A DNA stretch of 64,000 bases from Chiloscyllium plagiosum (taxonomy: Eukaryota). This document shows positions 10,509 to 56,312 of the stretch, piece after piece. The translations under genes and the position numbers were made by a program. Within the stretch, counting starts at the first letter, position 1, and each line of letters begins with the position of its first letter. The notes below the pieces were generated by a model. The model did no database searches and was not told where the DNA came from. It saw only the letters and a list, made by a program, of their open reading frames with translations. The stretch spans positions 62,184,850 through 62,248,849 of the forward strand of contig NC_057726.1 of the NCBI RefSeq assembly GCF_004010195.1. The letters run 5' to 3'.

Positions 10509-10685
10509 TTACGGCTTGCTATTTCTTGCTGGTGCATAGTTATCTTCTGTTCCTTTTCGTCTTCCAGTCTGCAGCGCTGCATACTCTGTGCCTTCTTTGG
10601 GATTGTGGTACTTCTCCGGTTTCATTGGACTACTCAACGTTAGCGCAGAATATGTCACCTTATTAGCGACAGCGTCTTGTGCGAC
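10509..10685 (-). CDS. Exon 7, terminal cytoplasmic exon, ITIM VTYSAL and ITSM-like TEYAAL
   Basis: Acceptor cctttacag. VAQDAVANKVTYSALTL...EGTEYAALQ...NSKP then TAA. Confidence 0.88.
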   Translation of the reverse strand, partial: VAQDAVANKVTYSALTLSSPMKPEKYHNPKEGTEYAALQTGRRKGTEDNYAPARNSKP

Positions 10686-13600
10686 CTGTAAAGGCAGCAT
10701 TTAGAAATATTGTTGAAGTAATATGGAACAGGATGTCCTCAAAGTGGTCATCAGAAGGACATGGAAATGATTTTCCGTATCTCACATGGTCAATGTCAAC
10801 TAAGGCAAATACCTTAACTGACAGGCTGAATCGCGATTTCATCATAATAATGTAAATTCTTCTTTGGTTATTCAGTCTTACCTCGGCGTACGTGCTTCTC
10901 TCTGCTTCAAATATACGTCTTGGAGTTCTCCTGCCTCTGCTGAATTCTACCGCAGTGTATTGCACACCCTCCGACGGCGCTTCCTGCGAGGAACAGATGC
11001 TAAATATTTCATTAAGTCCCTATTTCATGTCTTCAACAATTCGTTCGCCAAGCAGGGAACAAATGTACCCTTGGCCCGACTTCACTTGCAGAATCCACGT
11101 TTCAGATATATTCACGTGATTACAAATACTAATCCATTGTGGTCAATTTTAAAAGCTAAACTTTTTTTCACATGCATTTTGTAACACAATGTTTCAATGT
11201 CAATAAGTGTCAGCATTGGAAAGGATTTAATTTCAATCGAAAGAATGACTGAAAGCATAAAGTGCTATTAGCTAGAAACATTCTCATAAATATGACCAGA
11301 TTTTAAAAATCCAATTAATATTATTTGTCAAAAAGAATATTGCACCAACTGCATTTCAAACATCATTGGGTGAGCATAAACTTCAATAACCTTAAAGCGT
11401 TTTGAGGTGATTAGCATATTTCTGCCATCATTGCATGCGTCCCGGGCATTGCAAACCCCTGTGGTGATGAAGGAATGAACTTACCACCTTGTCACGACGA
11501 TCCGGTTGCCTTATGCATTCTCCATCATCTGCATACCAATGAAATATAATTACACTATGAGATGGAATTATTAATCCAGTTTCCGTATGGAAAACGAAGC
11601 TTTACAATTCTGAACCAAAGCGATAGAAAAAGACTATCAATCTTCAGTTGATACACAACAATAATGAAGAAGGGAGAATATGACATGGTCAACATCAGTT
11701 TCTAATCTTCCTGTTCGTAAAGGAACAATGATTACTCGGAAGAGGAATCACATTACCAGCTTCATTTCTGGCAGGGTACAATTCATTAGTTATGTTCAAA
11801 AGTGACGTTTTTTTGGAAACTAATATTCCTGAGAATTATTAACATTCTGATAACAAAATTATAACTTTTTCTGCGTTATGAAATGGGTCTGGAACAATCT
11901 GAGCTCTCTTAGAAAGTAATCAATTGCGTTTTCAACTTTAAATCATTTGGCATTCTCCAGAACATGCTAATTCCCCTTCATCCCCTTTATTGTCCTCAGA
12001 CTTCAACTGGATCGAAAATCAAGAGTTGACAGTATTTCTTACTTCTGTTAGATCGAAGCCCATATCGCTTTACAATTATGGTCACAAGCACGAGAAACGA
12101 AAATCCAACTGCCGCACAAATTGGAGTCCAGAAAATGAGTGAACTGTTGATACTGTCTGCAAAATTAAGAGGACATTAATTGCTGGTGGTGCTTGGATAG
12201 GAACTATTAAGAACTGTAAGAACCGCATTATTGAAGGGCAGTGAAAAAGCAGAAGTGCCAAATATTCTTTCAGTTGAATGTCGAAATCACTTCCATTTCC
12301 AATTGATGGCAAATTTTGAATCAGTTTCTGGAATGGATTCTTGGTTTGTACATCAAAAAGGACTGTTTTGCAAAGGTCGGGACACAAAACTGAGTGATTA
12401 CCTTTGGTCTAAAATACTGTTCTTCTTGACTTTGTTACGGATTAACACACGTTTTCTTGAAATTAGAGTCATGATCTCACAAGCATTTTCTTCGCTGGTC
12501 ACATCAAATTCTGAAATGGGGCGATCGGTTGACGAACTTTTTGCAAATAAATGAACTGTCTTTTTGATATTCATTGTATAACAAAGGACAGCTACTGTTT
12601 TGTAAATTGTCATTTTATGAGAGGACTAAATATTGTCAAAGTTAATGCATTAACTTTGCCGCACCATAGACAAGTCAAGTCCTCACATAAGCTTTGGGTT
12701 ATGTGTGAGACCCATCCCGTTTGAACGTGCCCTTGAGAGATAATACAGTACTTGATAAGGGACGACTTAGAATTCTGCCCTGGACACAACCAAGTGGGGA
12801 TGCAGGTTGAGCGAACCCAAACAATACAATGACCTCCCTGCAACAGTATAGGGAAAGTAGGCACTCGTCAGGAATGAAGTAATTTTACACGGAAGCAAAA
12901 CTGGTGAATGAGATGATGGCAGAAACGGATGAGGTACAGTTAGTAAGTTTGCAGATGACACCAAAATTGGAGGTGCAGTGGACAGCGAAGACGGTTACCT
13001 CAGATTACAACAGGATCTGAACCAGATGGGCCAATGGGCTGAGAAGTGGCAGATGGAGTTTAATTCAGATAAATGCGAGGTGCTGCATTTTGGGAAAGCA
13101 AATCTTAGCATGACTTATACACTTAATGGTAANNNNNNNNNNNNNNNNNNNNNNNNNNNNNNNNNNNNNNNNNNNNNNNNNNNNNNNNNNNNNNNNNNNN
13201 NNNNNNNNNNNNNNNNNNNNNNNNNNNNNNNNNNNNNNNNNNNNNNNNNNNNNNNNNNNNNNNNNNNNNNNNNNNNNNNNNNNNNNNNNNNNNNNNNNNN
13301 NNNNNNNNNNNNNNNNNNNNNNNNNNNNNNNNNNNNNNNNNNNNNNNNNNNNNNNNNNNNNNNNNNNNNNNNNNNNNNNNNNNNNNNNNNNNNNNNNNNN
13401 NNNNNNNNNNNNNNNNNNNNNNNNNNNNNNNNNNNNNNNNNNNNNNNNNNNNNNNNNNNNNNNNNNNNNNNNNNNNNNNNNNNNNNNNNNNNNNNNNNNN
13501 NNNNNNNNNNNNNNNNNNNNNNNNNNNNNNNNNNNNNNNNNNNNNNNNNNNNNNNNNNNNNNNNNNNNNNNNNNNNNNNNNNNNNNNNNNNNNNNNNNNN

Positions 13601-15662
13601 NNNNNNNNNNNNNNNNNNNNNNNNNNNNNNNNNNNNNNNNNNNNNNNNNNNNNNNNNNNNNNNNNNNNNNNNNNNNNNNNNNNNNNNNNNNNNNNNNNNN
13701 NNNNNNNNNNNNNNNNNNNNNNNNNNNNNNNNNNNNNNNNNNNNNNNNNNNNNNNNNNNNNNNNNNNNNNNNNNNNNNNNNNNNNNNNNNNNNNNNNNNN
13801 NNNNNNNNNNNNNNNNNNNNNNNNNNNNNNNNNNNNNNNNNNNNNNNNNNNGACAGCAGGAGTCTTTAGGGAGACGTGAGATACTGAACAGGTATACATG
13901 GTATTACTAGAAGGAGATTGAAACACAGCCAACGAACTGGATACTTCATACAGCCCCTCGCTGTTCTGCACTTTATTAGTATTTATTCCGACTGTAGTTT
14001 CGGAGCCGTTTATATACCAGGCGAGAGTGAAATCCTCCGGATAAAATGGAACTGTTTCACACAGAAGGGTCAAAGAAACTGGTGAGTTTTCTTTATTTAA
14101 CCTGGACGTAATTTTCAGTGGTACTGGGGAAACTGCATGAAAAGAATTGAAAAAGCCATGTTATTGGAAAACCGGAAAATGTTAAATTTGAGTATGCTTT
14201 TCAACCGCTCTGTTTTATCACAATCTCAGCATTCAAAGACGCAGCTTATTGTCTACATAACTTTATGTGCAAGCTTTCGAACTGTGGCATTTATTCACTT
14301 TTACTTGAAGTATCGGCTCCAATACTTGCTTTTTCTCAGCAGAAGAAAACTACAATTTGCTTAGCACTGTTTGTCTCTTGTATTTGAATAACTTAATTCA
14401 AATGAGCCCGGGCAGTGGAAAGGACAAAGAAAATAATTTTCATCAGCCCTTGTGCTTTGACGCTCACATGAAGAGGAACGATGAAAATGCTGCTTATCGT
14501 TCAAATGACGATTATTACGTTAGCCAAATTTCAAAACCAAAGTATTGTTACTGAAGAAATATATTAAATCTGTTGAACCTCAGGAGCTACAGATTCTCTG
14601 TATTGTTTTAGATACTGATTGGAGGGCACTGAATCTACTGCGTTGTATGCTTCAAAATGTGACTTCTTTTGCATTGCTCCCCTTTATCAGTAAGTAACTT
14701 CACTCTGGTTTTCAAGCCATAACGCGGAAATTATGTAAAAGTTAATTTCTGTCCGCTTCAACCTCAGAAGGGGTAATTGGAGGTAGTCAGGACATCAATA
14801 ACACACCACAGACTAGCTACATTGTTGTGCTACGATTTACATAAGTTGCTTGTTTTCGAGTATATGTGTCGTAAATTCTGCTGGTAAACACCTGGTATTT
14901 AAGGTGCCTTTGGAATTATAATGGTTAATAGTTACAAAAGTTTCAGTTTTCTGCCTGTGATATTGATTGTCCAATTACAATACTTTCAAGAGAATCGAAT
15001 TACCAAGTGTAGGTCGCCGCTCAAACGATCAGTCCCCATGATTAAACTGCAAACGCTCATGAAATAAGCGACCAGAAAATATCTTGTTACTTCGAAATAT
15101 TTCACACAGTTTGCTCTCTCACTTACCGTGCACAAGCAAATGGGAACCAGTTCCATTTATTTGACCTATTCTTTGATAAATCACACCGCAGTGGTAGACT
15201 CCAGAATCTCGAATGGTAACGCTCAGCAAGTTACAGAAAGCTGACGTTTCATTGTCAGCACCAACTCGTTTTCTGAAACGCCTCTGAAAATGATCATTTC
15301 CAATCTGCTTCCACCAAATAACCTTTGGTTTTGAACGGGGCCGAGAGCTGGGGAATGTGCAGCGGAAGATAACGTCCTCCCGTCTGTTCACAGTTATTTC
15401 TTTGGGCGTTTGAGTAACACTGAACGAAGTGTGATCCGCAGCTGTTAGAAACAAAGTAAGATACAGATAACTGTCGTATACGGCATCAAGATAGAAGAAT
15501 TCAATACTTCAACAGAGAGATGAATTAATATTCTTTAAATGAACGAGGAGCTGTTTCGAAAGCCTTTAATTAATTAAAGCAGATCTGTCAATTAAATAAG
15601 CAAGTACCGGTAAGAATAGACTCAAGTAGAATCAAACCGAGAAAATTCATCCTCGCTGTCAT
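10509..15662 (-). CDS. Spliced gene (7 visible exons): inhibitory IgSF receptor, SP-V(J)-C1-TM-ITIM tail, SIRP-like
   Basis: Exons 15608-15662, 15127-15441, 14132->gap, 12043-12156, 11485-11528, 10882-10983, 10509-10685. All visible boundaries are canonical AG/GT with compatible phases (1,1,[1],1,0,0) and no stops. The same layout recurs in the paralog at 34-39 kb. Confidence 0.9.
10882..10983 (-). CDS. Exon 6, cytoplasmic, ITIM VQYTAV and STYAE|V
   Basis: Acceptor ttcctcgcag, donor GAG|GTAAGA, 102 nt, phase 0/0. EAPSEGVQYTAVEFSRGRRTPRRIFEAERSTYAE. Confidence 0.88.
11485..11528 (-). CDS. Exon 5, short cytoplasmic exon (NDGECIRQPDRRDKV)
   Basis: Acceptor ggtatgcag, donor GTAAGT. 44 nt converts phase 1 to the phase 0 needed by the next exon; a degraded counterpart lies at ~34859-34900. 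Confidence 0.75.
12043..12156 (-). CDS. Exon 4, stalk and uncharged transmembrane segment
   Basis: Acceptor aattttgcag, donor A|GTAAGA, 114 nt, phase 1/1. xSINSSLIFWTPICAAVGFSFLVLVTIIVKRYGLRSNR with KR stop-transfer. Confidence 0.88.
12933..13132 (+). mobile_element. CR1 RT fragment in the C1-TM intron (continues into gap)
   Basis: SKFADDTKIGG...WAEKWQMEFNSDKCEVLHFGK. Confidence 0.92.
13133..13851. other. Assembly gap (719 N)
   Basis: Run of N; ORFs spanning it are artefacts. Confidence 1.
13852..14132 (-). CDS. Exon 3, C1-set Ig domain (3' end runs into assembly gap)
   Basis: Acceptor cttttcatgcag. LLCETVPFYPEDFTLAWY...GLYEVSSSL...YTCSVSHVSL carries the C1 signatures CxxxxFYP, W, YxCxVxHxSL. 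Confidence 0.93.
15127..15441 (-). CDS. Exon 2, V-set Ig domain with J-like G strand
   Basis: Acceptor tttctaacag, donor G|GTAAGT, 315 nt, phase 1/1. VTQTP..FRC..WW..DSGVYHC..INGTGSHLLVH. Confidence 0.95.
15608..15662 (-). CDS. Exon 1, signal peptide MTARMNFLGLILLESILT
   Basis: ATG (cat 15660-15662; second in-frame ATG 15648-15650), hydrophobic core, phase-1 donor G|GTACTT. Confidence 0.85.
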
Positions 15663-15728
15663 TCTAAGCAAAGGATTCAACTGACAACTCTGTACAGTTC
15701 GTGCGAGTTGGTAACTGCTGAGATTCTT

Positions 15729-15768
15729 TTCCGGTTTGTTTTCTACTAGATATGTCACAATGACGTTT
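15729..15768 (-). promoter_or_regulatory. Putative proximal promoter: ETS core (AACCGGAA) plus CRE/ATF half-site (TGACG)
   Basis: ttccggtt 15729-15736 and atgacgttt 15760-15768, both conserved at matching positions upstream of the paralog. Confidence 0.6.
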
Positions 15769-27185: not shown

Positions 27186-27837
27186 TGCCAGTGGGATACA
27201 ATTTCAGAAGTTTAGGTGAACACAAGGCCAGGGGGATTCGCTTCAGTGGTCAAGGGCATTCAACCTCGGATCTTCAGGTGAACATCCTCCAAGGCAGACT
27301 TCGGGACATGTGACAATGCAGAGTTGCTGAATAGAGGCTGATAATCATGTTCGGTATTCATGAGGCCAATGTCAACCCGGATATTAAGTTCATATCATAC
27401 TACAGATTACCTGACCACACTATACACACAATCAAATGCACCGGCACATGCACATGCACACTTTCACATAAACACACACATACGGCCCCTCTCCCATACA
27501 CACAACACATTCACACTCACGCTTTCTCACACACACATACTCCCACACACTCACTCACGCTCTGTCTCAAGCACACACCCACACTCACATGCATGCTCTC
27601 ACAAAAGATATACTCCCACACAGTTACACACACTCTATCTCTCAAGCACACACTCTCTCAAGAGCATGTGCACACAAACACACACACTCTTTCCATCAAA
27701 CACACCCTCTCACACACAAGTTCTCCCTCTCTCTCCCTCACACACACATGCACACACAGATATAAATCTATGGGGTGAATTTGCATTGGCAGATTTATAT
27801 TTGTAGATGGACTCTATTATGTTCAAAAACCACACAA

Positions 27838-30240
27838 AGAAGGAGTCAGGAAGGTTGATGAGGGCAGAGCAGTAGACCTCATCTATATGGATTTCAGTAA
27901 GGCCTTTGATAAGATTCCGAGTGGAAGGCTGCTTTGAAAGGATAGAATTCAGGAAATCCAGGGGGAGTTGGCAAACGAGGTACTCAATTGACTTGATGGT
28001 AGGAAGCACAGGGTAATAGTGGAAGGATGTTTGTTGGACTGGAGGCCTGTAACTAGTGGCGTGACTCAGGGGTCGTTGCTGGGCCCATTGGTTTTGTTGA
28101 CTATATTAATGATTTGGTTGAGAATGTACAAGGCATGATCAATAAGTTTGTAGATGACATTAAAATAGGTGTGGAAGGTTATCAGAAAATGCAGCAGGAT
28201 ATTGATCAACTGGGGAAGTGGGCCAAGAAATGGCAAATGAAGTTTAATATAGATAAGTGTGAGGCGTTGCATTTTGGAAAGTCAAATCAAGATAGGAGTT
28301 TCACGGTGAATGGTTGAGCCTTAAGGAGTGTAGTGGAACAGGGGGACCTTGGAGGTCAGGTTTCACAGTTCTCTGAAAGTGAAGTCACGGGGAGACAGGG
28401 TAATGAAGAAAGCTTTTGGCACACTGGCCTTCATCAGTCAGATCATTGAGTATAGACGTTGGGAAGTTATGTTGCAGTTGTATAGGACATTGGTGAGACT
28501 GCGTTTGGAGTATTGTGTTCAGAATTGATCATCTTGCTATAGGAAGGATGTTATTAAACTGGAAATAGTGCAGAAGAAATTTACGAGGACGTTTCTAGGA
28601 CTCAACTGTCTGAGTTATGGGGAGAGATTAGACAAGATAGGACATTTTTCTTTTGAGCACACGAGACCGAGGAGCAATCTTTTACAAGTGTATAAGGTGA
28701 CCTGGACAATACATGTTAATGATATAGAAGATGGTATCAGCAATAACATTAGCAAATTTGCTAATGATACAAAGCTGGGTGGCAGGGTGAAATGTGATGA
28801 GGATGTTAGGAGATTACAGGGTGACCTGGACAAGTTAGGTGAGTGGGCAGATGCATGGCAGATGCAGTTTAATGTGAATAAATGTATGGTTATCCACTTT
28901 GGTGGCAAGAACAGGAAGGCAGATTACTACCTCAATGGAATCAGTTTAGGTAAAGGGGCAGTACAGAGAGATCTGGGTGTTCTTGTACACCAGTCAATGA
29001 AGGCAAGCATGCAGGTACAGCAGGTAGTGAAGAAGGCTAAGAGCATCCTGGCCTTCATAACAAGAGGAATTGAGTATAGAAGCAAAGAGGTGCTTCTGCA
29101 GCTGTACAGGGCCCTGGTGAGACCAATCCTGGAGTACTGCGTGCGGTTCTGGTCTTCAAATTTGAGGAAAGACATTCTGGCTATTGAGGGAGTGCAGCGT
29201 AGGTTCACGAAGTCAATTCCTGGAATGGCGGGATTACCTTACACTGAAAAACTGAAGCGACTGGGCTTGTATACCCTTGAGTTTAGAAGACTGAGAGGGG
29301 ATCTGATTGAGACGCATAAGATTATGAAAGGATTGGACACTCTGGCAGCAGGAAACATGTTTCCGCTGATGGTGAGTGCCGAACCAGAGGACTCAGCATA
29401 AAAATACGGGGTAGACCATTTAGGACAGAGATGAGGAGAAACTTCTTCACCCAGAGAGTGGTGGCTGTGTGGAATGCTCTGCCCCAGAGGGCAGTGGAGG
29501 CCCAGTCTCTGGATTCATTTAAGAAAGAGTTGGATAGAGCTCTCAAGGATAGTGGAATCAAGGGTTATGGAGATAAGGCAGGAACAGGATACTGATTAGG
29601 AATGATCAGCCATGATCATGTTGAATGGCGGTGCAGGCTCGAAGGGCTGAATGCCCTACTCCTGCACTTATTGTCTATTGTCTATTTTTGTGTGAGGCAT
29701 GGGTAGGGTGAATGTACTCAGTCTTTTTTTCCAGGCTTAGACAATCGAGGACTACAGAGCATCACTTTAAGTTTAGAGGAGAGAGAATAAAAGAGAACCT
29801 GAGGGGCAACATTTTTACACAGAGGGTAGTAAGCATATGGAATGAGCTGCTAGTGGAAGTTGTTGAGGTGGATACATTAACAACATTTAAAAGGTAGTTA
29901 GATAAACACATGGATAGGAATGGAATAGAAGGATCCACTGTACTCTGGGCTAGTGAATTCCACTGATTCATGATCTTTAGAGAGAATTAAAAAGGGACAT
30001 TTAAGCAACTCTTGGATAGGTACATGGAAGATAATACAATGAAGGGCATATATTAGAGGAGGATAAAAGGTCGGCACAACATCGAGGGCTGAATGGTCTT
30101 TATTGTGTCATACTGTTCTATTTTCTATAAGGATAGGGGTCAAGTGCGGGGAAGTGGAGTTAGTGTACATGGACATTTTTTTGTGGCAAGGATCAGTTTG
30201 GACCAAAGGGCCTGTCTCCATGTTGTAGGACACTGTAACT
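27838..30240 (+). mobile_element. CR1 RT/3' region (host of further insertions)
   Basis: YMDFSKAFDK, KFVDD, KWQMKFN; interrupted at ~28698-29689 and ~29935-30128. Confidence 0.9.
28706..29686 (+). mobile_element. Younger 5'-truncated CR1 of a different subfamily, nested
   Basis: Long open frame SKFANDTKLGG...WQMQFN...LVRPILEYC; tail ttgtctattgtctat. Confidence 0.92.
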
Positions 30241-32237: not shown

Positions 32238-33090
32238 AGTTAAAAATCACACAACACCAGGTTATAGTCCAACAGGTTTAATTGGAAGCACACTAGCTTT
32301 CGGAGCGACGCTCCTTCGTCAGATAAAAGTGGAGAGCTCGATCGTAACACTGAATTTATAGCAAAAAATTGCAGTGTGATGTAACTGAAAATATACATTG
32401 AAAAAGTGATTGTCTGTTAAGCCTTTCATCTGTTGGAATACGGTAATAGTTTCACCTCTTTCATGTGTAAATCACAAACCTTTTTTTTTAAATTGCATAC
32501 TCGGGTCAGCTGTTAACAATGGTGATAGCTAGACAATAAGTTGAAGGTGTTAGCCCCCTGTGTTCTCTGTCTATGACCTGATATTTAGATTGATTCTAAT
32601 CTAAAAAAAAAGATAACAGAGTTTTACATAAATTCAAGCAGTTTTTGAGCTCAGAGTTCTACATGAATGTATGCAGTTTTTGAGCAAAGTGCAATGTAAC
32701 TCTGCAAGTACAAATTCACACCACAAAATATATGTGTGCATGTTGGTCTTTGTGTGTGTGTGTCTGTCTGGGGTAGGGGTTGTGAGTGTGAGAAGGTGTG
32801 TGTTTGTGTAGTGAGTGCAGAGTGTCTTAAGTCTGTGAGGGGGTGCATGTGTGAGTGTGGGAGTGCGTGTGTCTATAAGGGTGTGTGTGGGTGCCTGTGT
32901 GCACGTCTGTGTTAACCTGTGTCTGTGTGTATGTGAGAGTGTGTGTGTAGGAATATCTGTGTGTGTGTGTCTAGTGCAATGGTTATCACCTGTAATGTGA
33001 CATGAACCCAAGGTCCCGTTTGAGGCCCTCCCTATGGGTACCGAACTTAGCTATCAGCCTCTGCTCAGCCACTTTCCTCTGCTGCATGTA
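32238..33090 (-). mobile_element. Penelope-like 3' end with pseudo-LTR
   Basis: EQRLIAKFGTHREGLKRDLGFMSHY at ~32995-33070, TG tract, hammerhead-like core near the terminus. Confidence 0.85.
32298..32322 (-). ncRNA. Minimal hammerhead-ribozyme-like motif in Penelope pseudo-LTR
   Basis: CTGACGA-A-GGAGC-GTC-GCTCC-GAAA on the minus strand. Confidence 0.55.
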
Positions 33091-33959: not shown

Positions 33960-34087
33960 ATTTTGTTTCTATGTAGACCGTGTGTTTCTTTCTATAAATG
34001 GGCGTATTCTGAAATTCATTCTTCATTTTTCTACATCCACGTTTTCTCTGTGCATATCATCTCATCAAATGCTGGTGCTCGTTCAGT
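33960..34087 (-). pseudogene. Paralog terminal exon remnant
   Basis: Acceptor tttgcag. TERAPAFDEMIC...SEYAHL vs VAQDAVANKVTY...TEYAAL; internal stops and deletion. Confidence 0.7.
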
Positions 34088-34269
34088 CTGCAAATCCAAT
34101 GTTTGACAATATCACTTATGTATCATTTTATGCGGTATTTCAAAGTAATTACCAGAAAAGCTACCAAACGCCGATTTTCTAAACAGCGTTAAAGTCCACA
34201 AAAACGCACTTCCTTCGTTATTACATGAATGTTAATGGTACATTGGTGATAGAAGTCAGTAAGGCCTAC

Positions 34270-34370
34270 CTTGGCGGATATATATTTTTCTTTTCACATT
34301 TGTGTCGTAATGACTTCTTGCCTCTGCTCAAATCCAACGCAGCACAATGCACGATTTCAGTTACTTCTCC
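34270..34370 (-). pseudogene. Paralog ITIM exon, tyrosines lost
   Basis: GEVTEIVHCAALDLSRGKK... vs EAPSEGVQYTAVEFSRGRR. AG/GT intact, 101 nt vs 102 nt. Confidence 0.85.
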
Positions 34371-36201
34371 CTGCATGTGTCAGAATCCAAATATTTGGTT
34401 TCCAGCAAATTGCGACTAGTAAACAACAGTTGATCAGGGTTCAAGATGAGGTGCACAAACCATATATGTTTGCACAATTGGACTTATTGGAGCATTGTGA
34501 TCCCTGCAGTTAATACATAAATCTGTCAATGCTTATGCCACAGGGCGATATGACTGACATGAGCAGCAGATTTACAATATTAAGAATTTTTCTTTCCTCA
34601 CAACTGAAGCATGGATGTATCTACAATCAATTGTCACTTAAACATATCTTTCAGAAAACTGGCAATATTCCTTGAATGATTAAAGGATCATCATTTATCA
34701 GGTGCATTCCTCATCATGGTTTGAAAGAGTCACTGACAGCTGGCCAATACTTAGAGAATAGACTTGAACTGTTGGAATGATTTTGTTATACTATTTCCGT
34801 TAAAGCATGTTTTTCCTTTACCATTTCAACATCTACCTAAAGGAATGAATGAACATATTAGCTCTTCTGTGTATTTTGGCCCATTTATACATTTGTTTAT
34901 CTGCAACAAACAAAATGTAAAAATATTTTAAATGTTTATTTAGTCACCATATTCATGATTGCAAATATACATCAAATGTAAAGGTAATGCGAAGAATAGT
35001 TTACGAGTTTGGATTGAACCAAGGTATTTGAAATGCCGCACCTTATACAAACGAGCAGTAACGTTTCTTTACATTTTTCTTGAAATATCACGGAATATTT
35101 TTGGAGATTAAGGGAAACCATCTCATTCTTTAAACTTCTTTACTGCATAGATTTCTGGCATTGGAATCCTGCCTGATCTTTATATGACTCAAGAGAAAGA
35201 TTCGCCTAGTTCTCTCTTACTTGTGTGAAATGGCTTTGCGCACAGCAAACATAGCAAAGTAAGTGGTTAGAACTGGATTGTATAACAGATCCCGAAGACA
35301 GCTCGACCACTCAATACAAACCTGTCTAATTTTCCGCCTCAGCTGCACATTCTTCCATGCAGTACATATTCCTTAATTCTTGAGAGACTAAAATCTATCT
35401 ATTTTACCATTCAACATACAACTCGCTGGGGCAGGTAAGTTCAAAGGTGCTCAAGTTTCTGCTTAACGTAGTTGTAGGTGATCGACTGACACTTTGCTGA
35501 GACACTACCTTTCTATTCAAAATTCCCCCGGCCACCATAAACAATTTCCTAGTGCGTACCCCATCGTGCCTAGTCAGCGCATCGCCAATTTCTCAAAGGC
35601 GAATAGAAATAAAGAATAAATATTGAACTTTTTCACAAAGCCCTCGACAGGAGAATGAATAAAATGTTTTTTTGATACCGGGATAGGGGGAGCTGGTATA
35701 GAAACTCAGCCATGCTGGTTTTGTAAAGTGCATCAGGTTGGGATTTTGTATTGTTTCCTGCTGCTCTTTGTCCTTGCAGTCTATTTCGGCCAGAGACTCG
35801 CCCCCGTTCACTTTCCTGATCGAACCACAACAGAATGAGTTCGTAAGTGATTGTTCAGGAGTGAGCATTTCATTTAACATCTTTGAACAGGGACATTTAT
35901 ATCCAAGCAATTATACATATCATTATGACCTTGTTTAACATTTTGCAATCATACCACCTTCATAAACTGCATTTCAAAATAATCGACATTCGCTCATAAC
36001 AAATAACAATGTTAGTCGTGGTCTCCTGATGGACGGTTTTTTTTTCGCCCGAAACGTCGATTTTCTCCTGCTCCTCGGATGCTGCCTGACCTGCTGTGCT
36101 TTTCCAATACCACACTCTCGACTCTCCCTCCCCGTCGAGTTAGGAAGTTGTCAGTAACACCGAGGTTTGCATTTAAATAGTTAGCGTATAGTAGATCTTA
36201 T

Positions 36202-36314
36202 CATTGTTATATCCCACTGGTACCACGTTCCGGCAAAGATCCCGAACGCCAGGAACATCACTCCAGTAGCCACACACCCAATACCTGCAAAGTGAAATGG
36301 TATTCCGACACGAG
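36202..36314 (-). pseudogene. Paralog TM exon, donor inactivated
   Basis: xRVGIPFHFAGIGCVATGVMFLAFGIFAGTWY aligns in register with the gene 1 TM exon (F8, C13, A15, G17, FL20-21, Y31). 113 nt vs 114 nt; donor GTAAGA->ATAAGA. Confidence 0.85.
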
Positions 36315-36824
36315 CTACAAGGTTGAAACAATGATTACATTATGGCGAATGTTAACGGAAAAGGCCTTAACATTGATTAGCAAAGCTGGTGCTTTCAGTA
36401 TATCTGTTCAAATTGCATTAAGACCAGACAGAAAAACACAGGTAATATTTGAAGTAACGCCTTCATAAAATAAACTAGACATTCGGGATTAATCTATGAA
36501 AGAGATTGTTGGTTCAGCAATCTCATAATATTAGCAAAGTGAATTCAATGAGAGAGGGACAGATTCTATGTAATCAGATGACTTAATCAGCTTCTTCACT
36601 TTTTATAGATATATGTCTTTAAGTAATTTTCCGGTAATGAGAAGTATTATTTCTTGAAACATAATTTCACTCATTGCGTGTTCTATACTGGCATCGGGAT
36701 AGCAACTCTTCATAACTGCATCAGTGTAAAGATAGCAGGCAATGGAAACAAAAACAAAACCGAAACGTATGAACGATAAACAGAAGTATATTTAAGTAGA
36801 ATATAAGGCATTTATTAATACGCT

Positions 36825-37415
36825 TACCTTCATTGCTCGCACCTTTGAGTATGGGTGTTGAGAGGTCATGTTGAGGTTGTATAGACGTTGGCGAGGCCTC
36901 TTCTGGAGTACTGTGTCCAGTTCTAGTCGCCCTGTTGGAGGGAGGATATCATCAAACTGGAGAGGGTTCAGAAAAGATTTACGAGGATGTTGCCAGGAAT
37001 GGAAGGTTTGAGTTACAGGAAGAGGCTGGATAGACTGGGACGCTTTTCAAAGGAATATAGGAGGTTGAGGGGTGGCATTACAGCGGCTTTTTCTAATCAT
37101 GAGGGGTAAACATACGGGAAATGGTAGGTGACCTTTCCCTATGGTGGGAGATTTCAAGACTCGGAGGCATTTTCTAGGGTGTGAGGCGAAAACTTTAAAA
37201 ATAATGTGGGGGCACACTGTTACACAGAGAAGATTTCGTGTGTGAAATGAGTTTCCAGGGAAAGTGGTGAACTGGGGTACAGTTACAACGATTAAAAGAC
37301 ATGAATCAGAAATGTTTGGAGCGATATGAGCCAAGAGCAGGCGGGTGCGGCTATTATAATTTGGGATTATGGCTTGTATAGGCTGGCTGGAATCTGTTTA
37401 TGTGCTGTATGACTT
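36825..37415 (+). mobile_element. CR1 3' fragment in pseudogene C1-TM intron
   Basis: LARPLLEYCVQF..RVQKRFTRMLPG and 3'UTR. Confidence 0.9.
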
Positions 37416-37649
37416 TTACTGTTATTGACTTGGTGTATAAAAGGAAAGAATGTTTGCGGAGAATGACTAATAGTTGGTGATTTAAAGTATTGATAAGAAA
37501 TTGCCTTCAATTTTAATGTTTGCCTTAATATATTAGAAAGGATTTCCGTGAACACTCTTCCTGAATAGTAAGAACCACAAAGTTTACGCTTGAGATCTGG
37601 ATAAACTGTACAGGAAGCTGGCTCTCCTTTTTGCACTGTTAGCTTCCTA

Positions 37650-37952
37650 CTTCAGGGATCGTATGTGAAGCAGTACCTGAAGTCTGCAGTGAGCTAGGAA
37701 AGGTGAACAGATATATCTGGTGTTACTTGGGATAAATTGCATCTCAACCAAAGAGTTGGAAACTCCATTCAGCCCATCGGGGTTCTTCGCATTAGTTATA
37801 CGTATCACTATTGCGTTCTCAATGTCATTTTTATATCAGGTGATCGTGAGTTCCGACGGATGAAATGCAGCTATTTCACACGCGAGAATCAGAGACAACA
37901 GTGGAATTCATTTCAAGTGGCCTGCAGGCAATCCACAGTGAGCTTGGGGTCG
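37650..37952 (-). pseudogene. Paralog C1 exon, disabled
   Basis: SLILACEIAAFHPSELTIT*YKN...NPDGLNGVSNSL...SNTRYIC. Core Trp is TGA (37836-37838); frameshifts present; 3' boundary approximate. Confidence 0.9.
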
Positions 37953-38918
37953 CTGAGGGGTAGAAAACAAACAAAGTTGTTACCGGATTTTGATGTGGGA
38001 AATTGAATATAATTCAGATTAATATTCAGTAGTTTTACGATTAGAACACCATTCGAAAGGGATACTTCTGTCATTTTAATATTTCTCACATCATCTGCAC
38101 CTATGAATTCAATGGACACGCCAGCATGCGATGAATTTCATGACAACTGCAATCAAATCGGAACAACGATCACTGGAGTCGATAAGTTAATTCTGTTTTC
38201 TCTACACCGACACTGCCAGACTGAGTTTCTCCAGCAACTTTTGCTTTTGCTTCAGATTTCCCTCTTTTGATGGCGCTGGGGTTAGGCGGAGCATCAAAAT
38301 GGACCAACAGTCGTCTATGCACTGGGAGAAGCACATTATTATAGATGATTTTCAATTATGATATGTTTACAACTTGTCCAGTATTTCCTCAGTCGGGCAC
38401 ATATTACACAATGTACATAATCTACATAATAAGTATGTTATGTTTGGTGGTCTAATTAATCTGATTAAACTTCATTTGTTTTCGAGTTTTGAGAAGATTT
38501 GTAGCTCAGATTGAGTTTCTGGATGTAGGTTTGCTCGCTGAGCTGTAAGGTTCGTTTTCATTTGTTTGTTGTGCTCTGAGTCCGGCTTTATTTGTCTGCC
38601 GCTACACCACGGAAGATGAAAGTACAATTTATCTGAAAATATGCTGATAGTCATGCTTTTACTGCCAAAAAAAAGCGCAACACAATAATCACAAAAGCAA
38701 AATATAGTACTGCGGTTGCTGGAAATCTGAAACTAGCTTGGATTTGGCTGGAGAAATTCAGCAGGTCTGGCGGCATCTGTGGAAATAAACAGATATGACT
38801 CTTCGTCAGTACTCAACTCTGCTTCTCTCTCCACAGATCCACCATTTAAATCACAAAAGTACGCTCATTGCCTTTGATGCATTATCAACTGTTCGTCTTC
38901 CTGGTGATTGTCACCTAC

Positions 38919-39216
38919 CATTTACGCATCAGTGTGATCCGATCCTTGTTGAATACTGTACAGTAATGAAGACCAAATTCTTGGATAGTCACTTGCAGCA
39001 AGCATAGGAGAGCACTCCTTTCACGGCTAACACCAAATTGCTTTCTGCTATTGCCGGGGATTGGGAATTAATTCTCGCCCTGTTTCCACCAATGCTCATT
39101 TATCGAGGAATCCTCCCCAGAGGTGGGAAAGAAGCAGATCAAGGCGATATTCTTCCTTCTGGATATAAATACTTCTTTAGGTTTTTGAATAACACCGAAA
39201 ACAGCGTGTTCCTCAG
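38919..39216 (-). pseudogene. Paralog V exon, disabled
   Basis: EEHAVFGVIQKPKEVFISRRKNIALICFFP...WWKQGEN*...LLQVTIQEFGLHYC...GSH*CVN. Acceptor AG->AA, TAA at 39068-39070, deletion before the G strand. Confidence 0.92.
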
Positions 39217-39370
39217 TTGCCAGAAAATAGGGTCATAGATAATTTAATAGTACTGGGCAAAGCATGCAGATCGAAGAGGGAGAAAAGATCTTATTTTGCG
39301 GAATTATATTTCGGTAAATAAATATACGATAAATTGATTTAGGTAGGGTGATGATCAAAGAGGTATTTAC

Positions 39371-39426
39371 CTGTACAAATAATATCCCTGAGAATCAAGC
39401 ATCGGAAAACCATACTCGCTTTTCAT
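39371..39426 (-). pseudogene. Paralog signal-peptide exon (MVFRCLILRDIICT from second ATG)
   Basis: Aligns to gene 1 exon 1. Donor G|GTAAAT is intact; the first ATG is out of frame by a 1-nt insertion. Confidence 0.8.
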
Positions 39427-39492
39427 TCTGAACACTAAATTTAATTGATACCTTTTAACACTAGCTGCGAGACTGCAACATTGAAAGATAAC

Positions 39493-39533
39493 TTCCGGTT
39501 AGAGTTCCATCACTTGTGAGGCTTATGACGTTT
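39493..39533 (-). promoter_or_regulatory. Paralog promoter ETS plus CRE motifs
   Basis: ttccggtt 39493-39500 and atgacgttt 39525-39533. The ETS motif starts 67 nt from the first ATG in both genes. Confidence 0.55.
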
Positions 39534-40489
39534 GTCTTCCTGTAACTGCGGCTTCTGCAAATAGGTTTCATTTGTTAGGCCCAATCTTTGCATTGACACT
39601 GAAAGACATGCGTTGTTGGCAGAACGGGAAAGATGCGACCTTTTCAAATGTCAATTTTCCCAACACTTTTAAGAGTTCTGTAACTAACTATGGTGCGTCA
39701 CATTAGTGCAACCAATTGGACGTTTTGTTGATCGTGTCAAACGATGCAGAGAAATTCAGAACGCGAAGCAATTAAATTCCGCTCTTAATTCTTTAAGATA
39801 AACTAAGATAAAGTAGAAGACTATACATGCGACAGACGTCAGGTGAATAACTGAACTAAGAACCAGGTCGATATAGATTCGAATGGGAACTGAAAAGGCA
39901 GATTAGAGAAGCTGAAAGAAAGATTATGAATGGTGAAAAAGCACACCAAAAAGCTTTTCCTGGCATTCACTGACTAAAGAGCTGCTAAGAAATGGATTGT
40001 GGCCGATCAGGGTCCAAAAAATTGATTTAACAACGGTTGGTATGGCTGAACTACTGAATGCCAATTTGTAAATGTCTCCTTGAAGAGAGTGTTGCCCTGC
40101 TCATGGCGAAATGGTGGATATTTCGTGCGTTGAAGGTGTTTAAAATTGATATCAACGAAGCACTTAAAAGACTTTTTATGTTACGTTGATAAGGAATCGG
40201 GACTAGATGAGATGCAAGCAATGTTACCAGGCCAAAAAGAGTGGCAATTTTGGACTCACTGGCTGTTGTGAGATAACTAAGGTGACTCGATACAAATTAA
40301 TTGTAAACTAATGTAGGGAATTGATAGAATGGAAAAATGCCTCAGAAAGCTTCAAGAGACAGCTCAAAAATTTGACTGATCTTCAGATATACATACCAGT
40401 TCTTGCAGAATCAAAAATCTACGTTTTCTGTTCCTTATACTCTTCTGAAGAAAAGTAAACAAAACTTGGCTTTTGCTTCTTCATTATGG

Positions 40490-40805
40490 GTGACACAGTG
40501 GTTAGCACTGTTGCCTCACTGCGCCAGAGACCCGGGTTCAATTCCCGCCTCAGGCAACTGTCTGTGTGGAGTTTGCACGTCCTCCCCGTGTCTGCATGGG
40601 TTTCCTCTGGGTGCTCCGGTTTCCTCCCACAGTCCAAAAATGTGCAGGGTAGGTGAATTGGCCATGCTAAATTGCTTGGAGTGTTAGGTGAAGAGATAAA
40701 TGTAGGGGAATGGGTCTGAGTGACTTCCTCTTCGGAGGGTCGTTGTGGACTTGAAGGGCCGAAGGGCCTGTTTCCATACTGTAAGTAATCTAAAAATAAA
40801 AAAAA
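40490..40805 (+). mobile_element. HE1 SINE, near full length
   Basis: A-box cagtggttagc, B-box ggttcaattcc, core, gggccgaagggcctgtttcc 3' end. Confidence 0.92.
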
Positions 40806-42279
40806 AATCCTCTTCCACATCAAAATATCTGGTCCCTTGCCTTCTCTGACAGAATTCATTTCCCATCTTCTTCATTTGTCCTGTTCGATTGCAAGACCAC
40901 GATGTGATATTGCATTTAACCTGTTATCTGTTATTATCAGGAAAACTATTCCCTCCTCAGATGGCATACACCCTAAAACGTTATTGGTCCTAAAACGTTT
41001 TGCAACACCAGCAAGACTAAGTAAAGTTTAAATACCACGTATCCATATATTCAAGCATTAACCTATTCAGTTTTCTCCCATTATTCCAACAGTACAATGT
41101 GCTTCCACTGCCGCCATAAAGTTATACACAGAAACATCCCGCCCCAACTGGATGGTCAGTGCTAAGTCTGGCTTCTCTCAACGAACAGTGTGACGGACTT
41201 CATACTCTCCTTTTTTTCCTAAATTGGAGGTGTGGGCACCCTAGCTAGACAGTAGATTCGCATATCAGGATTGCTTTCTGAACCTAAGTAGCTGTGGCCA
41301 GCACATCAACTTCCATAGTACCTCTCCTGCAGTGCAGGCAATAATCTACCGATAAGAAAACGGTAATGAGTAGTTGAACTAGATTGGAAACAATTTTAAT
41401 CCATGGGTGAACATTCAACAAAACACTCCATTCCCAAATAGCCGCCATCATGTCACATTCACTCCTTCATTTAAGTCTGTCTCCAGACACTTGGTCAACT
41501 GTTGGACGGGAAGTCGCTGCTTCATTTTCACCTGGGACGCGCTTGATCGTACTCAGTAAATGGTTTAACAGTTCAAGGATTCGCTTCCCCTCGGGAAACA
41601 GATTTCTCAGAGTACAGTTTTTGTTTAAGATTGTCTGTTACAATCAGCTCCTGGGCAGAGTCAATATTTTCTATGCAGCTTATTAAGAATGCTTTTTAAC
41701 ACCACTCGAGCAGGGAGGACTTGAAGCCAAAGAACTACTGAAGGCCTTTTTAGTTTTGAACATGCACACCAGCTGCTCTCCTGGGATTTGAACCAAGTCG
41801 CCAGACCCTCAACATTGCTACTTCAGTCACATTACCATTACACCACCCTCTTCCCAGCTACGCACCCTGACAATTGGGAACAATTTTCTGTTACTTTTGC
41901 CATTTTAATTAAAATGCTCAGAGATGTTATAACACACTTATAGAGCACGTGGAACATGAACCCTTCCCCATTCTCCACACAGAAGTAGGAACACTACCAC
42001 TGCACCACATATTATGAAATTTCCAATGACTGCTTTGCCTTGAGATTGAATCAGAAGTTTGAGTTAATAATTGGAAAGTGATGATAAGCATACTGACCCC
42101 ACCAAGGCTCATCTGAGCCACGTAATTGTTTTCTTTACCATGATATGCCACCTACGTGGTTGGTTTGAGATAAAGTTAATCAATGGAGTCCCAGCCAGCG
42201 ATACTGAGCTCCCACGAATGGATAAAAACAAAAGTCTCCATTGAAGATCAGCTGTAGTAAAAAGTAAAAGAAGTCAATG

Positions 42280-56004: not shown

Positions 56005-56312
56005 AGCACGGTGGTTAGCACTGCTGCCTCACAGCGCCTGAGACCCGGGTTCAATTCCCGCCTCAGGCGACTGACTGTGTGGAGTTTGCACATTCTCCCC
56101 ATGTCTGTGTGGGTTTCCTCCGGGTGCTCCGGTTTCCTCCCACAGTCCAAAAGATGTGCAGGTCAGGTGAACTGGCCATGCTAAATTGCCCGTAGTGTTA
56201 GGTAAGGGGTAAATGTAGGGGTATGGGTGGGTTACGCTTCGGCGGGTCGGTGTGGACTTGTTGGGCCGAAGGGCCTGTTTCCACACTGTAATGTAATCTA
56301 ATCTAATCTAAA
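56005..56312 (+). mobile_element. HE1 SINE, young
   Basis: A/B boxes, core, (TCTAA)n tail. Confidence 0.93.

What the first reader, a model, noticed from the sequence alone, without database searches (positions are those of the whole stretch)
33960..39426. Hidden full-length pseudogene paralog: the receptor belongs to a tandem birth-and-death cluster
Seen: hand translation of the minus strand recovers all seven exons in the same order and orientation ~23.5 kb away, none recognisable in the ORF track. Lesions include V acceptor AG->AA, TAA in V, core C1 Trp->TGA, TM donor GT->AT and several frameshifts. Protein divergence from gene 1 is large, so the duplication is old. Inference: a multigene cluster with turnover, as in KIR/LILR/NITR-type families.
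Basis: partly seen in the sequence, partly recalled or inferred. Interest (0 to 1): 0.8.

Follow-up and report, generated by a model that had tools for sequence, protein, structure and literature searches.

The report
Dead tandem copy of shark receptor
A badly decayed second copy of a shark immune-receptor gene lies about 24 kb from an apparently working copy, which is the ordinary debris expected in a gene family that grows by duplication and loses members.

Summary
On the minus strand at 33960-39426 lies a colinear, intron-containing copy of the VJ-C1-TM-ITIM receptor gene at 10509-15662. V and C1 exons match by tblastn (E 2.7e-15 and 2e-11). The leader and ITIM exon 6 beat all 300 shuffles. 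The TM exon is supported through other family members. The exon 6/7 boundary is supported by a read joint. Exon 5 stays tentative.

All named lesions are present: AA acceptor, TAA in V, Trp to TGA in C1, AT donor, frameshifts. Contigs from other samples fit them where they cover them.

Separate V and C1 trees put the copy in gene 1's subfamily on a branch 4-5 times the median. Introns no longer align, so the duplication is old.

The family is wide. 121 representatives match gene 1's V exon. All 20 single-V ones whose names I looked up are chondrichthyan, from 12 species, several linked on one contig, and most carry automatic SIRP-like names.

This scan noted the same family elsewhere on this chromosome; I did not check those notes.

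Verdict: an ordinary unprocessed pseudogene. One oddity: contigs of two other runs join exon 6 to exon 7 exactly.

The parts
39371..39426 (-). pseudogene exon 1 (split leader). It has a 1-nt insertion after the first ATG. The inner ATG at 39413-39411 keeps the homologous frame, but the hydrophobic core now holds Arg, Arg and Asp. The donor GT at 39370-39369 is intact.
   Evidence: Local DNA alignment to gene 1's leader scores 21 against a null of 10.9+-1.4, reached by 0/300 shuffles. Letters checked.
39427..39542 (-). proximal 5' flank, weakly alignable with gene 1's flank in the same register
   Evidence: blastn block 15170-15777 ~ 38943-39542. The flank alone aligns over 102 nt at 62%, reached by 11/500 shuffles.
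38919..39216 (-). pseudogene exon 2 (V domain). The acceptor is AA instead of AG. There is an in-frame TAA at 39070-39068. The exon is 298 nt against 315. The J-like G-x-G stretch is lost, and the exon ends in phase 2 instead of phase 1.
   Evidence: tblastn E 2.7e-15. DNA score 45, reached by 0/500 shuffles. Letters. Pfam finds nothing in its two stop-free pieces.
37650..37952 (-). pseudogene exon 3 (C1 domain). The acceptor AG is intact. There is a TGA at 37915-37913 in the entering frame, then a frameshift before the B strand. The core Trp is TGA at 37838-37836. Two extra codons follow the second Cys. The 3' end is approximate, because gene 1's counterpart lies in the N run.
   Evidence: tblastn E 2.0e-11. 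DNA is 65% identical over 245 nt, reached by 0/500 shuffles. Frames. An X9 contig spans it with 2 other letters and no gaps.
36202..36314 (-). pseudogene exon 4 (stalk end, uncharged transmembrane segment, membrane-proximal Tyr). It is 113 nt against 114. The donor is AT instead of GT.
   Evidence: Best hit of 6/46 (7/46 with composition correction) family tails, E 6e-4 to 6e-3. Hydropathy rank 3 after collapsing overlaps. Not significant against gene 1 DNA: 97/300 and 241/1000. Donor letters.
34680..34717 (-). tentative exon 5 (candidate A). 13 of 15 nt match the start of gene 1's exon 5. The acceptor position reads CC, and TGA TAA follow. A second candidate lies at about 34902.
   Evidence: Best local hit in the interval but not significant, 137/300. 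It reaches 10/1000 only in a window chosen after the fact. Candidate B reaches 474/1000. A weak tblastn hit of the Stegostoma tail lands at the same place, E 11.
34270..34370 (-). pseudogene exon 6 (first ITIM exon). The Tyr of the first ITIM is now Cys. It is 101 nt against 102, so the frame shifts into exon 7. Acceptor AG and donor GT are intact.
   Evidence: DNA score 24 against a null of 11.2+-1.3, reached by 0/300 shuffles. blastn block E 6e-7. Letters.
33960..34087 (-). pseudogene exon 7 (remnant of the ITIM/ITSM tail). It has stops in all three frames. One frame keeps an E-Y-A-x-L remnant.
   Evidence: The acceptor is fixed by the read joint 34270|34087. The best local alignment to gene 1's exon 7 starts at offset 22 in both, but the score is not significant (117/300, 242/1000). 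Frames.
10509..15662 (-). gene 1, the apparently intact paralog. Exons: 15662-15608, 15441-15127, 14132 into the N run, 12156-12043, 11528-11488, 10983-10882, 10685-10509. It encodes VJ-type V, one C1, an uncharged TM and four Tyr motifs.
   Evidence: Reading. Pfam gives V-set 1.1e-9 and C1-set 2.7e-12.
13133..13851 (.). N run that hides the 3' end of gene 1's C1 exon and the start of intron 3. It was not filled.

Best explanation
The stretch is an unprocessed (duplicated, intron-containing) pseudogene. It is an old tandem paralog of the neighbouring non-rearranging VJ-C1-TM-ITIM receptor gene. It descends from an inhibitory-type member: its TM is uncharged and it keeps remnants of three of the four tail tyrosine motifs. 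It can no longer make a receptor. The leader core is charged and the V acceptor is destroyed. V and C1 each carry stops, including one at the core Trp. At least four exons have lengths that break the frame. The TM donor is lost, and the first ITIM tyrosine is gone.

Shown here: homology, colinearity, the lesions, presence in other samples, and placement in gene 1's subfamily.

Inferred: it was functional for part of its history, because exons still align at 61-65% while introns do not. Also inferred: it is one death event in a chondrichthyan-wide family that evolves by duplication and loss.
For: Shuffle controls are. The TM exon is supported through 46 family tails. The lesions were read letter by letter.

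Intron positions and phases are shared with gene 1, so the copy is not a retrocopy.

Contigs from other samples are compatible with the lesions. X9 covers all of C1 with 2 other letters and 0 gaps, and covers the AA acceptor with 0 differences. X5 covers 39015-39400 with 3 other letters; the two that were listed are not in the TAA.

No RNA read fell on any exon bin in two single-cell RNA runs.

The V and C1 trees, built separately, both place it with gene 1, the Stegostoma trio and two carcharhiniform proteins (SH-aLRT 92 and 89; careful V tree 79/79). Its end branches are 1.19 and 1.54 against a median of 0.3.

None of the 121 representatives is closer to it than gene 1 is. The highest identity to its V exon is 40% over at least 80 aa.
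Against: TM, exon 5 and exon 7 are not significant against gene 1 DNA. Exon 5 has two candidate sites.

Pfam sees no domain in any of the 4 stop-free pieces.

The tree position of so long a branch is unsure, and no starred clade holds it.

The RNA runs were read to about 2% and 6% only and are single-cell poly-A libraries, so silence is not shown.

A GT..AG joint of exons 6 and 7 in contigs of two runs hints at transcription or at an intron-less DNA form.

Of the differences in other samples, 152 rows were not shown, so one unlisted difference could sit on a lesion.
Confidence: 0.9

Rival explanations
1. The copy is dead as a receptor gene but is still transcribed. Only its one intron with both splice sites intact (intron 6) is removed. 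That would make it a transcribed pseudogene, perhaps with an RNA-level role or none.
For: The joint 34270|34087 skips 182 nt with GT..AG ends on the minus strand. It appears in one contig each of X9 (depth 118.7 against about 30 for the neighbouring contig) and X5 (depth 9.7). X9's contigs total only 149 Mb yet hold 54% of the stretch's words. That pattern fits an RNA or targeted library better than a whole-genome one; this is my inference. The introns whose splice sites are mutated are spanned unspliced by X9 contigs.
Against: The tool marks X9 as 'DNA?' and X5 as '?'. X5's contigs total 2.37 Gb, which looks like whole-genome DNA, so the joined form may be DNA. The two runs on record as RNA gave 0 reads on the exons.
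Confidence: 0.3
2. The intron-less junction is DNA. It would be either a segregating allele that lost intron 6 precisely, through recombination with a reverse-transcribed spliced RNA, or a retrocopy of this or a near-identical paralog elsewhere in the genome.
For: In X5 the only intron-6 contig is divergent, with 12 differences in 34117-34252 at depth 10.7. The joined contig has depth 9.7. Together these are near the local depth, as two haplotypes would be. In X9 no contig covers the listed intron-6 positions. An X9 contig over 34290-36040 differs at 83 letters plus 45 gap letters of 1722, which points to a second, divergent haplotype or copy.
Against: In X9 the joined contig is four times deeper than its neighbours, which a single-copy allele would not be. 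The run kinds are guesses. Only 31 and 50 letters lie on the shorter side of the joint.
Confidence: 0.25
3. The copy is not gene 1's own tandem duplicate. It would be the relic of an older, separate lineage of the family whose intact orthologs are lost or unsampled, lying next to gene 1 only because the whole cluster is old.
For: In the quick V and C1 trees it sits in an unresolved fork at the base of the subfamily. It is about equally distant (35-40%) from many members. Introns are unalignable.
Against: The careful V tree joins it to gene 1 plus the Stegostoma trio (79/79). The quick C1 tree does the same (46). The leader and proximal 5' flank align specifically with gene 1. Orientation and exon plan are the same.
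Confidence: 0.2
4. The gene is functional and the lesions are assembly or sequencing errors.
For: None found. The window does contain an N run in gene 1, so the assembly here is imperfect.
Against: There are more than ten independent lesions of different kinds. Contigs from two other studies cover C1 with 0 gaps and the AA acceptor with 0 differences. The long tree branches fit real decay.
Confidence: 0.02

Closest known systems
Unprocessed pseudogenes inside multigene immune-receptor clusters such as KIR, LILR and teleost NITR (recalled knowledge, not tested here)
   Same: A tandem, same-strand, intron-containing dead copy lies beside working paralogs. The family has inhibitory ITIM forms and members with a charged TM. 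There are tight groups of very similar members in the trees.
   Different: The domain make-up here is VJ-type V plus one C1-set domain. It is not the C2/I-set domains of KIR/LILR, nor the V plus I/C2 of NITR. The hosts are cartilaginous fish. No common descent with those families is shown.
SIRP alpha / SHPS-1 (the NCBI automatic name of many members; the nearest Atlas clusters score 0.96-0.97)
   Same: A V domain with a J-like end, C1-set constant domain(s), an uncharged TM, and a tail with four tyrosine motifs of ITIM/ITSM type in gene 1. The expected mechanism for the intact members is recruitment of SH2 phosphatases; that is inference.
   Different: One C1 domain instead of two. No SIRP chain is among the 60 best of 485 PDB matches of gene 1's V exon. 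None of the 10 multi-domain neighbours looked up is a tetrapod SIRP. CD47 binding is untested. The copy studied here has lost the motifs.
UrIg / UrIg2, non-rearranging shark VJ-C genes (PMC12227049: abstract, section 7 and search passages read)
   Same: A single-exon VJ domain with a split leader followed by C1-type domains, in elasmobranchs. Gene 1's C1 exon matches the UrIg2 chain 9dmx_A at E 6e-15, third in the list.
   Different: UrIg2 has nine or more C domains and no ITIM is mentioned (0 occurrences of 'ITIM' and 'pseudogene' in the text). Here there is one C1, a TM and an ITIM tail, and many paralogs. Linkage to the MHC or the antigen-receptor complex was not examined.
PRARP, the non-rearranging V-C1 genes of chicken (Fu et al. 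2019; seen only as a citation inside PMC10751288; its content is recalled)
   Same: Non-rearranging V plus C1 membrane proteins, discussed as relics of antigen-receptor precursors.
   Different: Not compared: no PRARP sequence was available from a tool, and the paper was not read.

Membership tests
Unprocessed (duplicated) pseudogene | Homology to a parent or paralog gene over its exons, in the same order and strand | tested here: met
   Six of 7 exons are supported; exon 5 is tentative.
Unprocessed (duplicated) pseudogene | Introns kept at the parent's positions (not a retrocopy) | tested here: met
   Exon starts are offset by 23.2-24.2 kb from gene 1's, with introns between all exons. Leader donor GT, C1 acceptor AG and intron 6 GT..AG are still present.
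Unprocessed (duplicated) pseudogene | Disabling lesions that exclude a full-length product | tested here: met
   TAA at 39070-39068. TGA at 37915-37913 and 37838-37836. Acceptor AA, donor AT. Exon lengths 298/315, 113/114 and 101/102.
Unprocessed (duplicated) pseudogene | Lesions real, not assembly errors | tested here: met
   X9 and X5 contigs from other studies cover C1 (0 gaps, 2 other letters) and the V acceptor (0 differences). The TAA is covered only by X5, with one difference whose place was not shown.
Unprocessed (duplicated) pseudogene | No expression of a coding mRNA | tested here: inconclusive
   0 reads on exon bins in X21 and X22, but only about 2% and 6% of the runs were read. 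An exon 6-7 joint exists in X5 and X9, whose kind is uncertain.
Chondrichthyan VJ-C1-TM receptor family (automatic names: SHPS-1/SIRP-like, tapasin-related-like and others) | V-set domain related to the family's V | tested here: met
   tblastn to gene 1 E 2.7e-15. Family members score up to 73 bits on it. The V tree places it in gene 1's subfamily. Pfam alone finds nothing in the pieces.
Chondrichthyan VJ-C1-TM receptor family (automatic names: SHPS-1/SIRP-like, tapasin-related-like and others) | J-like G-x-G motif at the end of the V exon | tested here: not met
   Gene 1 and most relatives have it. In the copy the stretch after the second Cys is 7 residues shorter and has no G-x-G. I read this as decay of a former member.
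Chondrichthyan VJ-C1-TM receptor family (automatic names: SHPS-1/SIRP-like, tapasin-related-like and others) | One C1-set domain after the V | tested here: met
   tblastn E 2.0e-11. The C1 tree gives the same subfamily, 89.
Chondrichthyan VJ-C1-TM receptor family (automatic names: SHPS-1/SIRP-like, tapasin-related-like and others) | TM exon and tyrosine-motif tail | tested here: met
   TM. Exon 6 remnant 0/300, with the Tyr replaced. Only remnants are left, and none is usable.
SIRP family proper | V followed by two C1-set domains | tested here: not met
   There is one C1 exon in gene 1 as far as the N run allows, in the copy, and in full-length relatives of 360-410 aa.
SIRP family proper | Specific sequence kinship or orthology with tetrapod SIRPs | tested here: inconclusive
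   The Atlas feature search puts SIRP alpha clusters nearest (0.96-0.97). But no SIRP chain is among the 60 shown of 485 PDB hits of the V exon. No tetrapod SIRP is among the 30 names looked up.
SIRP family proper | CD47 binding and SHP-1/2 recruitment | not testable with these tools
   Needs protein work.
KIR / LILR | C2/I-set Ig domains encoded in the leukocyte receptor complex | tested here: not met
   The domains are V-set and C1-set. Only the mode of evolution is alike.
NITR | V plus I/C2-type domain; teleost clusters | tested here: not met
   The second domain is C1-set, 2.7e-12. All 20 family representatives looked up are chondrichthyan.
UrIg / UrIg2 | VJ followed by three or more C domains | tested here: not met
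   A single C1. UrIg2 architecture is from PMC12227049 section 7.

The most novel reading that the evidence does not exclude
The relic is not inert. Either it is still transcribed and its only intact intron is spliced, or a precise intron-6 loss allele or retrocopy (itself a footprint of germline transcription) segregates beside a roughly 5-7% divergent haplotype. That would point to KIR-like haplotypic diversity and RNA-mediated remodelling in a receptor cluster. The cluster belongs to a chondrichthyan-wide VJ-C1 family with inhibitory and charged-TM members, for which I found no paper.
Probability: 0.3. Interest if true: 0.55.

Novelty: new member of a known kind. Interest (0 to 1): 0.3.

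Why it matters
By itself a dead paralog is ordinary.

Its value is as a marker. It shows that this non-rearranging VJ-C1 receptor family of cartilaginous fish loses members as well as gaining them. It also gives a neutral yardstick for dating duplications and for measuring selection on the intact neighbours.

The family is of interest for two reasons. It has the antigen-receptor domain plan (VJ plus C1) wired to an inhibitory tail. And I found no paper on it in six searches of the held library, although NCBI annotation carries many members under borrowed names.

The exact exon 6-7 joint in other samples is a cheap, testable lead on pseudogene transcription or RNA-mediated intron loss in a shark.

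Tried and rejected
DNA alignment of gene 1's TM exon, exon 5 and exon 7 to the copy gave nothing above shuffles (97/300, 137/300 and 117/300; 241/1000 and 242/1000). Those exons therefore rest on other evidence.

My first by-eye site for exon 5 (about 34902) scored at chance (474/1000). I replaced it with a still tentative site at 34717.

A second hydrophobic ORF at 36481-36419 was considered as the TM exon. I rejected it because it was the best hit of only 1 of 46, then 0 of 46, family tails.

A segment-by-segment identity table with free end gaps gave partial alignments, then crashed. I discarded it for the shuffle test.

My early claim that part of intron 6 is homologous to gene 1's intron 6 (from the block edge) did not hold; it reached 124/500.

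Pfam on the four stop-free pieces found nothing.

A search for an intact ortholog of the copy was limited to the 121 representatives found with gene 1's V exon. None is close.

The literature search for 'PRARP' returned only unrelated uses of the word.

Supplements are closed. Table S1 and fig. S1-S2 of PMC12227049 may list other VJ-C genes that I could not see.

No structure was predicted, because it would not bear on the question.

Full report
WHAT IS THERE. The window is eukaryotic DNA of about 40% G+C. It is full of LINE-like reverse-transcriptase ORFs and has one N run at 13133-13851.

Gene 1 lies on the minus strand. I read it directly as seven exons:
- a split leader (15662-15608)
- a V exon that ends in a J-like G-x-G stretch (15441-15127)
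- a C1 exon that runs from 14132 into the N run
- a TM exon with an uncharged membrane segment (12156-12043)
- three cytoplasmic exons (11528-11488, 10983-10882, 10685-10509) carrying four tyrosine motifs of ITIM/ITSM type

Pfam calls V-set (1.1e-9) and C1-set (2.7e-12) on the two Ig exons. The 3' end of the C1 exon is hidden by the N run. I did not fill it, so gene 1's intactness is not fully verified.

THE OBSERVATION. I searched each gene 1 exon peptide apart. tblastn finds the V exon at 39211-38954 (39% of 87 aligned, E 2.7e-15). It finds the C1 exon at 37898-37704 (40% of 65, E 2.0e-11). Both hits are on the minus strand and in the right order. Nothing else in the window reaches E < 0.2.

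blastn gives three colinear blocks (C1, E 5e-25; V plus leader plus flank, E 2e-19; exon 6, E 6e-7). The 7 other HSPs have E >= 0.22.

Against 300 shuffles of the query, the leader (z 7.3) and exon 6 (z 10.0) are never reached. TM, exon 5 and exon 7 are at chance (97, 137 and 117 of 300). They stay at chance in narrowed targets (241/1000 and 242/1000).

- I took 46 tails from family proteins and searched them against 4.65 kb on both strands. Six of them (seven with composition correction) have their best hit on this 113-nt site. These include the best-scoring ones (E 6e-4, 1e-3 and 6e-3). The other hydrophobic ORF gets 1 and then 0.
- It ranks third of the hydrophobic segments left after collapsing overlaps among 1066 stop-free windows. 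It is the first of these without a charged residue.
- Its length is 113 nt against gene 1's 114.

The boundaries of exons 6 and 7, which I had read by eye at 34270 and 34087, are exactly the two sides of a joint in contigs of two other runs. That joint skips 182 nt and has GT..AG ends on the minus strand. The best local alignment of gene 1's exon 7 to the copy starts 22 nt into both exons.

Exon 5 remains tentative. The better site (34717) shares 13 of 15 nt with the start of gene 1's exon 5, but it reaches 10/1000 only in a window chosen after the fact. My first site (34902) is at chance.

THE LESIONS.
- Leader: one extra base after the first ATG. In the homologous frame, the inner ATG at 39413 opens a leader whose core holds Arg, Arg and Asp.
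- V: the acceptor is AA (39218-39217). There is a TAA at 39070-39068. The exon is 298 nt against 315, the G-x-G stretch is lost, and the exon ends in phase 2.
- C1: a TGA at 37915-37913 in the entering frame. A one-base frameshift comes before the B strand. The core Trp codon is TGA (37838-37836, against TGG at 14019-14017). Two extra codons follow the second Cys.
- TM: 113 against 114 nt, and the donor is AT (36201-36200).
- Exon 5 candidate: CC at the acceptor position, followed by TGA TAA.
- Exon 6: the first ITIM Tyr is Cys. The exon is 101 against 102 nt, so after the observed joint the frame stops within ten codons.
- Exon 7: stops in all three frames.

ARE THE LESIONS REAL? The stretch is held by runs of six studies of one organism. 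An X9 contig covers 36986-38171, which is all of C1, with 2 other letters and no gaps. Another X9 contig covers 39083-39252, which includes the AA acceptor, with no difference. An X5 contig covers 39015-39400 with 3 other letters; the two that were listed (39063, 39103) are outside the TAA. 152 difference rows were not shown, so a single hidden difference on a lesion cannot be excluded. The frameshifts are shared, since the contigs have 0 gaps.

EXPRESSION. Two single-cell poly-A RNA runs were read to about 2% and 6%. They gave no read on any exon bin. X21's 1996 laid reads fall on bins with DNA depths of 1e5-4e6, that is, on interspersed repeats in the introns. This does not show silence.

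THE FAMILY. Gene 1's V exon finds 121 proteins at E <= 1e-3 among 1.84 billion representatives: 24 at <= 1e-10 and one at <= 1e-30. The best is a Chiloscyllium punctatum fragment at 82% identity.

I looked up the names of 30 of these. All 20 single-V representatives are from cartilaginous fish, 12 species covering sharks, rays and a chimaera. Their automatic names include 'tyrosine-protein phosphatase non-receptor type substrate 1-like', 'signal-regulatory protein beta-1-like', 'tapasin-related protein-like', 'H-2 class II ... beta chain-like' and 'NCR3LG1-like'. Several lie on one contig per species. The 10 multi-domain ones are a mixed bag (pIgR-like, NCAM2, turtle-like, a TCR alpha V array and others).

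Of the 54 members with a C1 match, 21 have at least one ITIM-like motif in the tail. Some have Lys, Arg or Asp in or at the edge of the TM. That is a lead towards activating partners, not a test.

The Atlas puts SIRP alpha clusters nearest to the Stegostoma full-length relative (0.96-0.97). By sequence, gene 1's C1 exon is nearest to Ig heavy-chain C domains, with the UrIg2 chain 9dmx_A third (E 6e-15). Its V exon has only weak PDB matches and no SIRP chain among the 60 shown.

WHERE THE COPY BELONGS. I built separate V and C1 trees, each of 53 rows. The rows were 51 database proteins that have both domains at 80% coverage or more, plus the two window rows. Proteins with only one domain were left out.
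- Both trees put the copy in the same small subfamily as gene 1, three nearly identical Stegostoma proteins and two carcharhiniform proteins (SH-aLRT 92 in an 11-row set for V, 89 in a 7-row set for C1).
- The careful V tree joins it to gene 1 plus the Stegostoma trio (79/79). Holding it with gene 1 alone costs 9.35 log-likelihood units and is not rejected (p-AU 0.141).
- The careful C1 tree and two tests did not finish.
- The copy's end branches are 1.19 and 1.54 against medians of 0.3, so its exact place is unsure.
- No representative is closer to the copy than gene 1 is: at most 40% identity over at least 80 aa, and 44% over 50 aa.

Introns 1, 2 and 6 and the 3' flank do not align above shuffles (331, 413, 128, 124 and 370 of 500). 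The V and C1 exons do (0/500, at 61% and 65% identity). The proximal 5' flank aligns marginally (11/500).

I infer an old duplication, probably older than the split from the Stegostoma lineage. I also infer a copy that stayed under constraint for part of that time. This last point is inference, not measurement.

AN UNEXPLAINED EXTRA. The joint 34270|34087 stands in one contig of X9 (depth 118.7, neighbours about 30) and one of X5 (depth 9.7). Neither run is on record as RNA. X9's contigs total only 149 Mb yet hold 54% of the stretch, which suits an RNA or targeted library. X5's contigs total 2.37 Gb, which suits whole-genome DNA.

In X5 the only intron-6 contig has 12 differences in 135 nt. 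In X9 a 1722-nt contig next to the joint differs at 83 letters plus 45 gap letters.

Two readings are open. One is a transcribed pseudogene in which only the intron with intact splice sites is spliced. The other is an intron-less allele or retrocopy on a divergent haplotype. The read laying cap stopped me from going further.

COMPARISON WITH WHAT IS KNOWN. The copy is a textbook unprocessed pseudogene.

Its family works like SIRP alpha and other ITIM receptors; this is inferred from motifs. It fails the SIRP architecture (one C1, not two). It fails the KIR/LILR and NITR domain types. It fails the UrIg plan of three or more C domains (PMC12227049, section 7 read; 'ITIM' and 'pseudogene' occur 0 times in that paper).

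PMC10751288 (passages only) mentions VJ-C1 genes and cites the chicken PRARP paper, which I did not read.

Six searches of the held library found no paper on this VJ-C1-ITIM family in cartilaginous fish. Subscription journals and closed supplements may hold one.

Other notes of this scan report the same kind of gene 92 kb, 425 kb and 672 kb before the window, and 7.4 kb and 6.7-7.7 Mb beyond it. I could not check them.

VERDICT. The finding is an ordinary dead member of a multigene receptor family. Its interest lies mainly in what it says about that family, and in the odd exon 6-7 joint.

Noticed in passing
window 34087-34270: Contigs of two other runs (X5, X9; kinds uncertain) join 34270 to 34087 exactly. 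The joint skips 182 nt with GT..AG ends on the minus strand, which is the pseudogene's intron 6. In X9 the joined contig is about four times deeper than its neighbours.
   Followed up: partly
window 34290-36040 and 35895-36239: An X9 contig differs from the window at 83 letters plus 45 gap letters of 1722. The next X9 contig (36986-38171) differs at only 2 of 1186. Several differences (35895-35918, 36149, 36232, 36239) are shared by X5 and X9. This suggests a divergent haplotype or a second copy of the 3' half.
   Followed up: no
window 38919-38925 and 37947-37952: The pseudogene's V exon ends in phase 2, and the A-strand frame of its C1 exon also expects phase 2. The net 17-nt loss in V and the 1-nt loss at the C1 start therefore cancel (18 nt in all). 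This may mean that the shortening of the J-like region happened while the gene was still in use.
   Followed up: no
window 13133-13851: A 719-nt N run swallows the 3' end of gene 1's C1 exon and the start of intron 3, so gene 1 cannot be certified intact. A LINE-like ORF fragment abuts it at 12978-13132.
   Followed up: no
window 35973-36155, 36888-37070, 38169-38900: These stretches lie inside the pseudogene's introns. Summed contig depths there are 1e5-4e6, and they hold nearly all of the single-cell RNA reads laid. They are high-copy interspersed repeats that are transcribed somewhere in the genome.
   Followed up: no
window 40419-40859 (-), 52784-53074 (+), 56029-56286 (-): Three ORFs share a long, nearly identical peptide stretch, so a repeated element is present at least three times in the window. 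I did not identify it.
   Followed up: no
window 343-1064, 24529-25774, 28568-29401, 44201-47170, 53081-53689, 61687-63902: LINE-type reverse-transcriptase and endonuclease-like ORF fragments on both strands fill much of the space between and around the two receptor copies.
   Followed up: no
window 27347-27806 and 32634-33011: ORFs rich in His-Thr repeats, that is, microsatellite-like CA/TG-rich tracts, lie between the two copies.
   Followed up: no
database proteins P0113, P0115, P0008, P0039, P0034, P0032, P0010, P0042: Some family members have Lys mid-TM (P0113, P0115), or Arg or Asp at the TM edges with short tails; these are possible activating partners. Two others (P0010, P0042) go from V straight to the TM and an ITIM tail, without a C1 domain.
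   Followed up: partly
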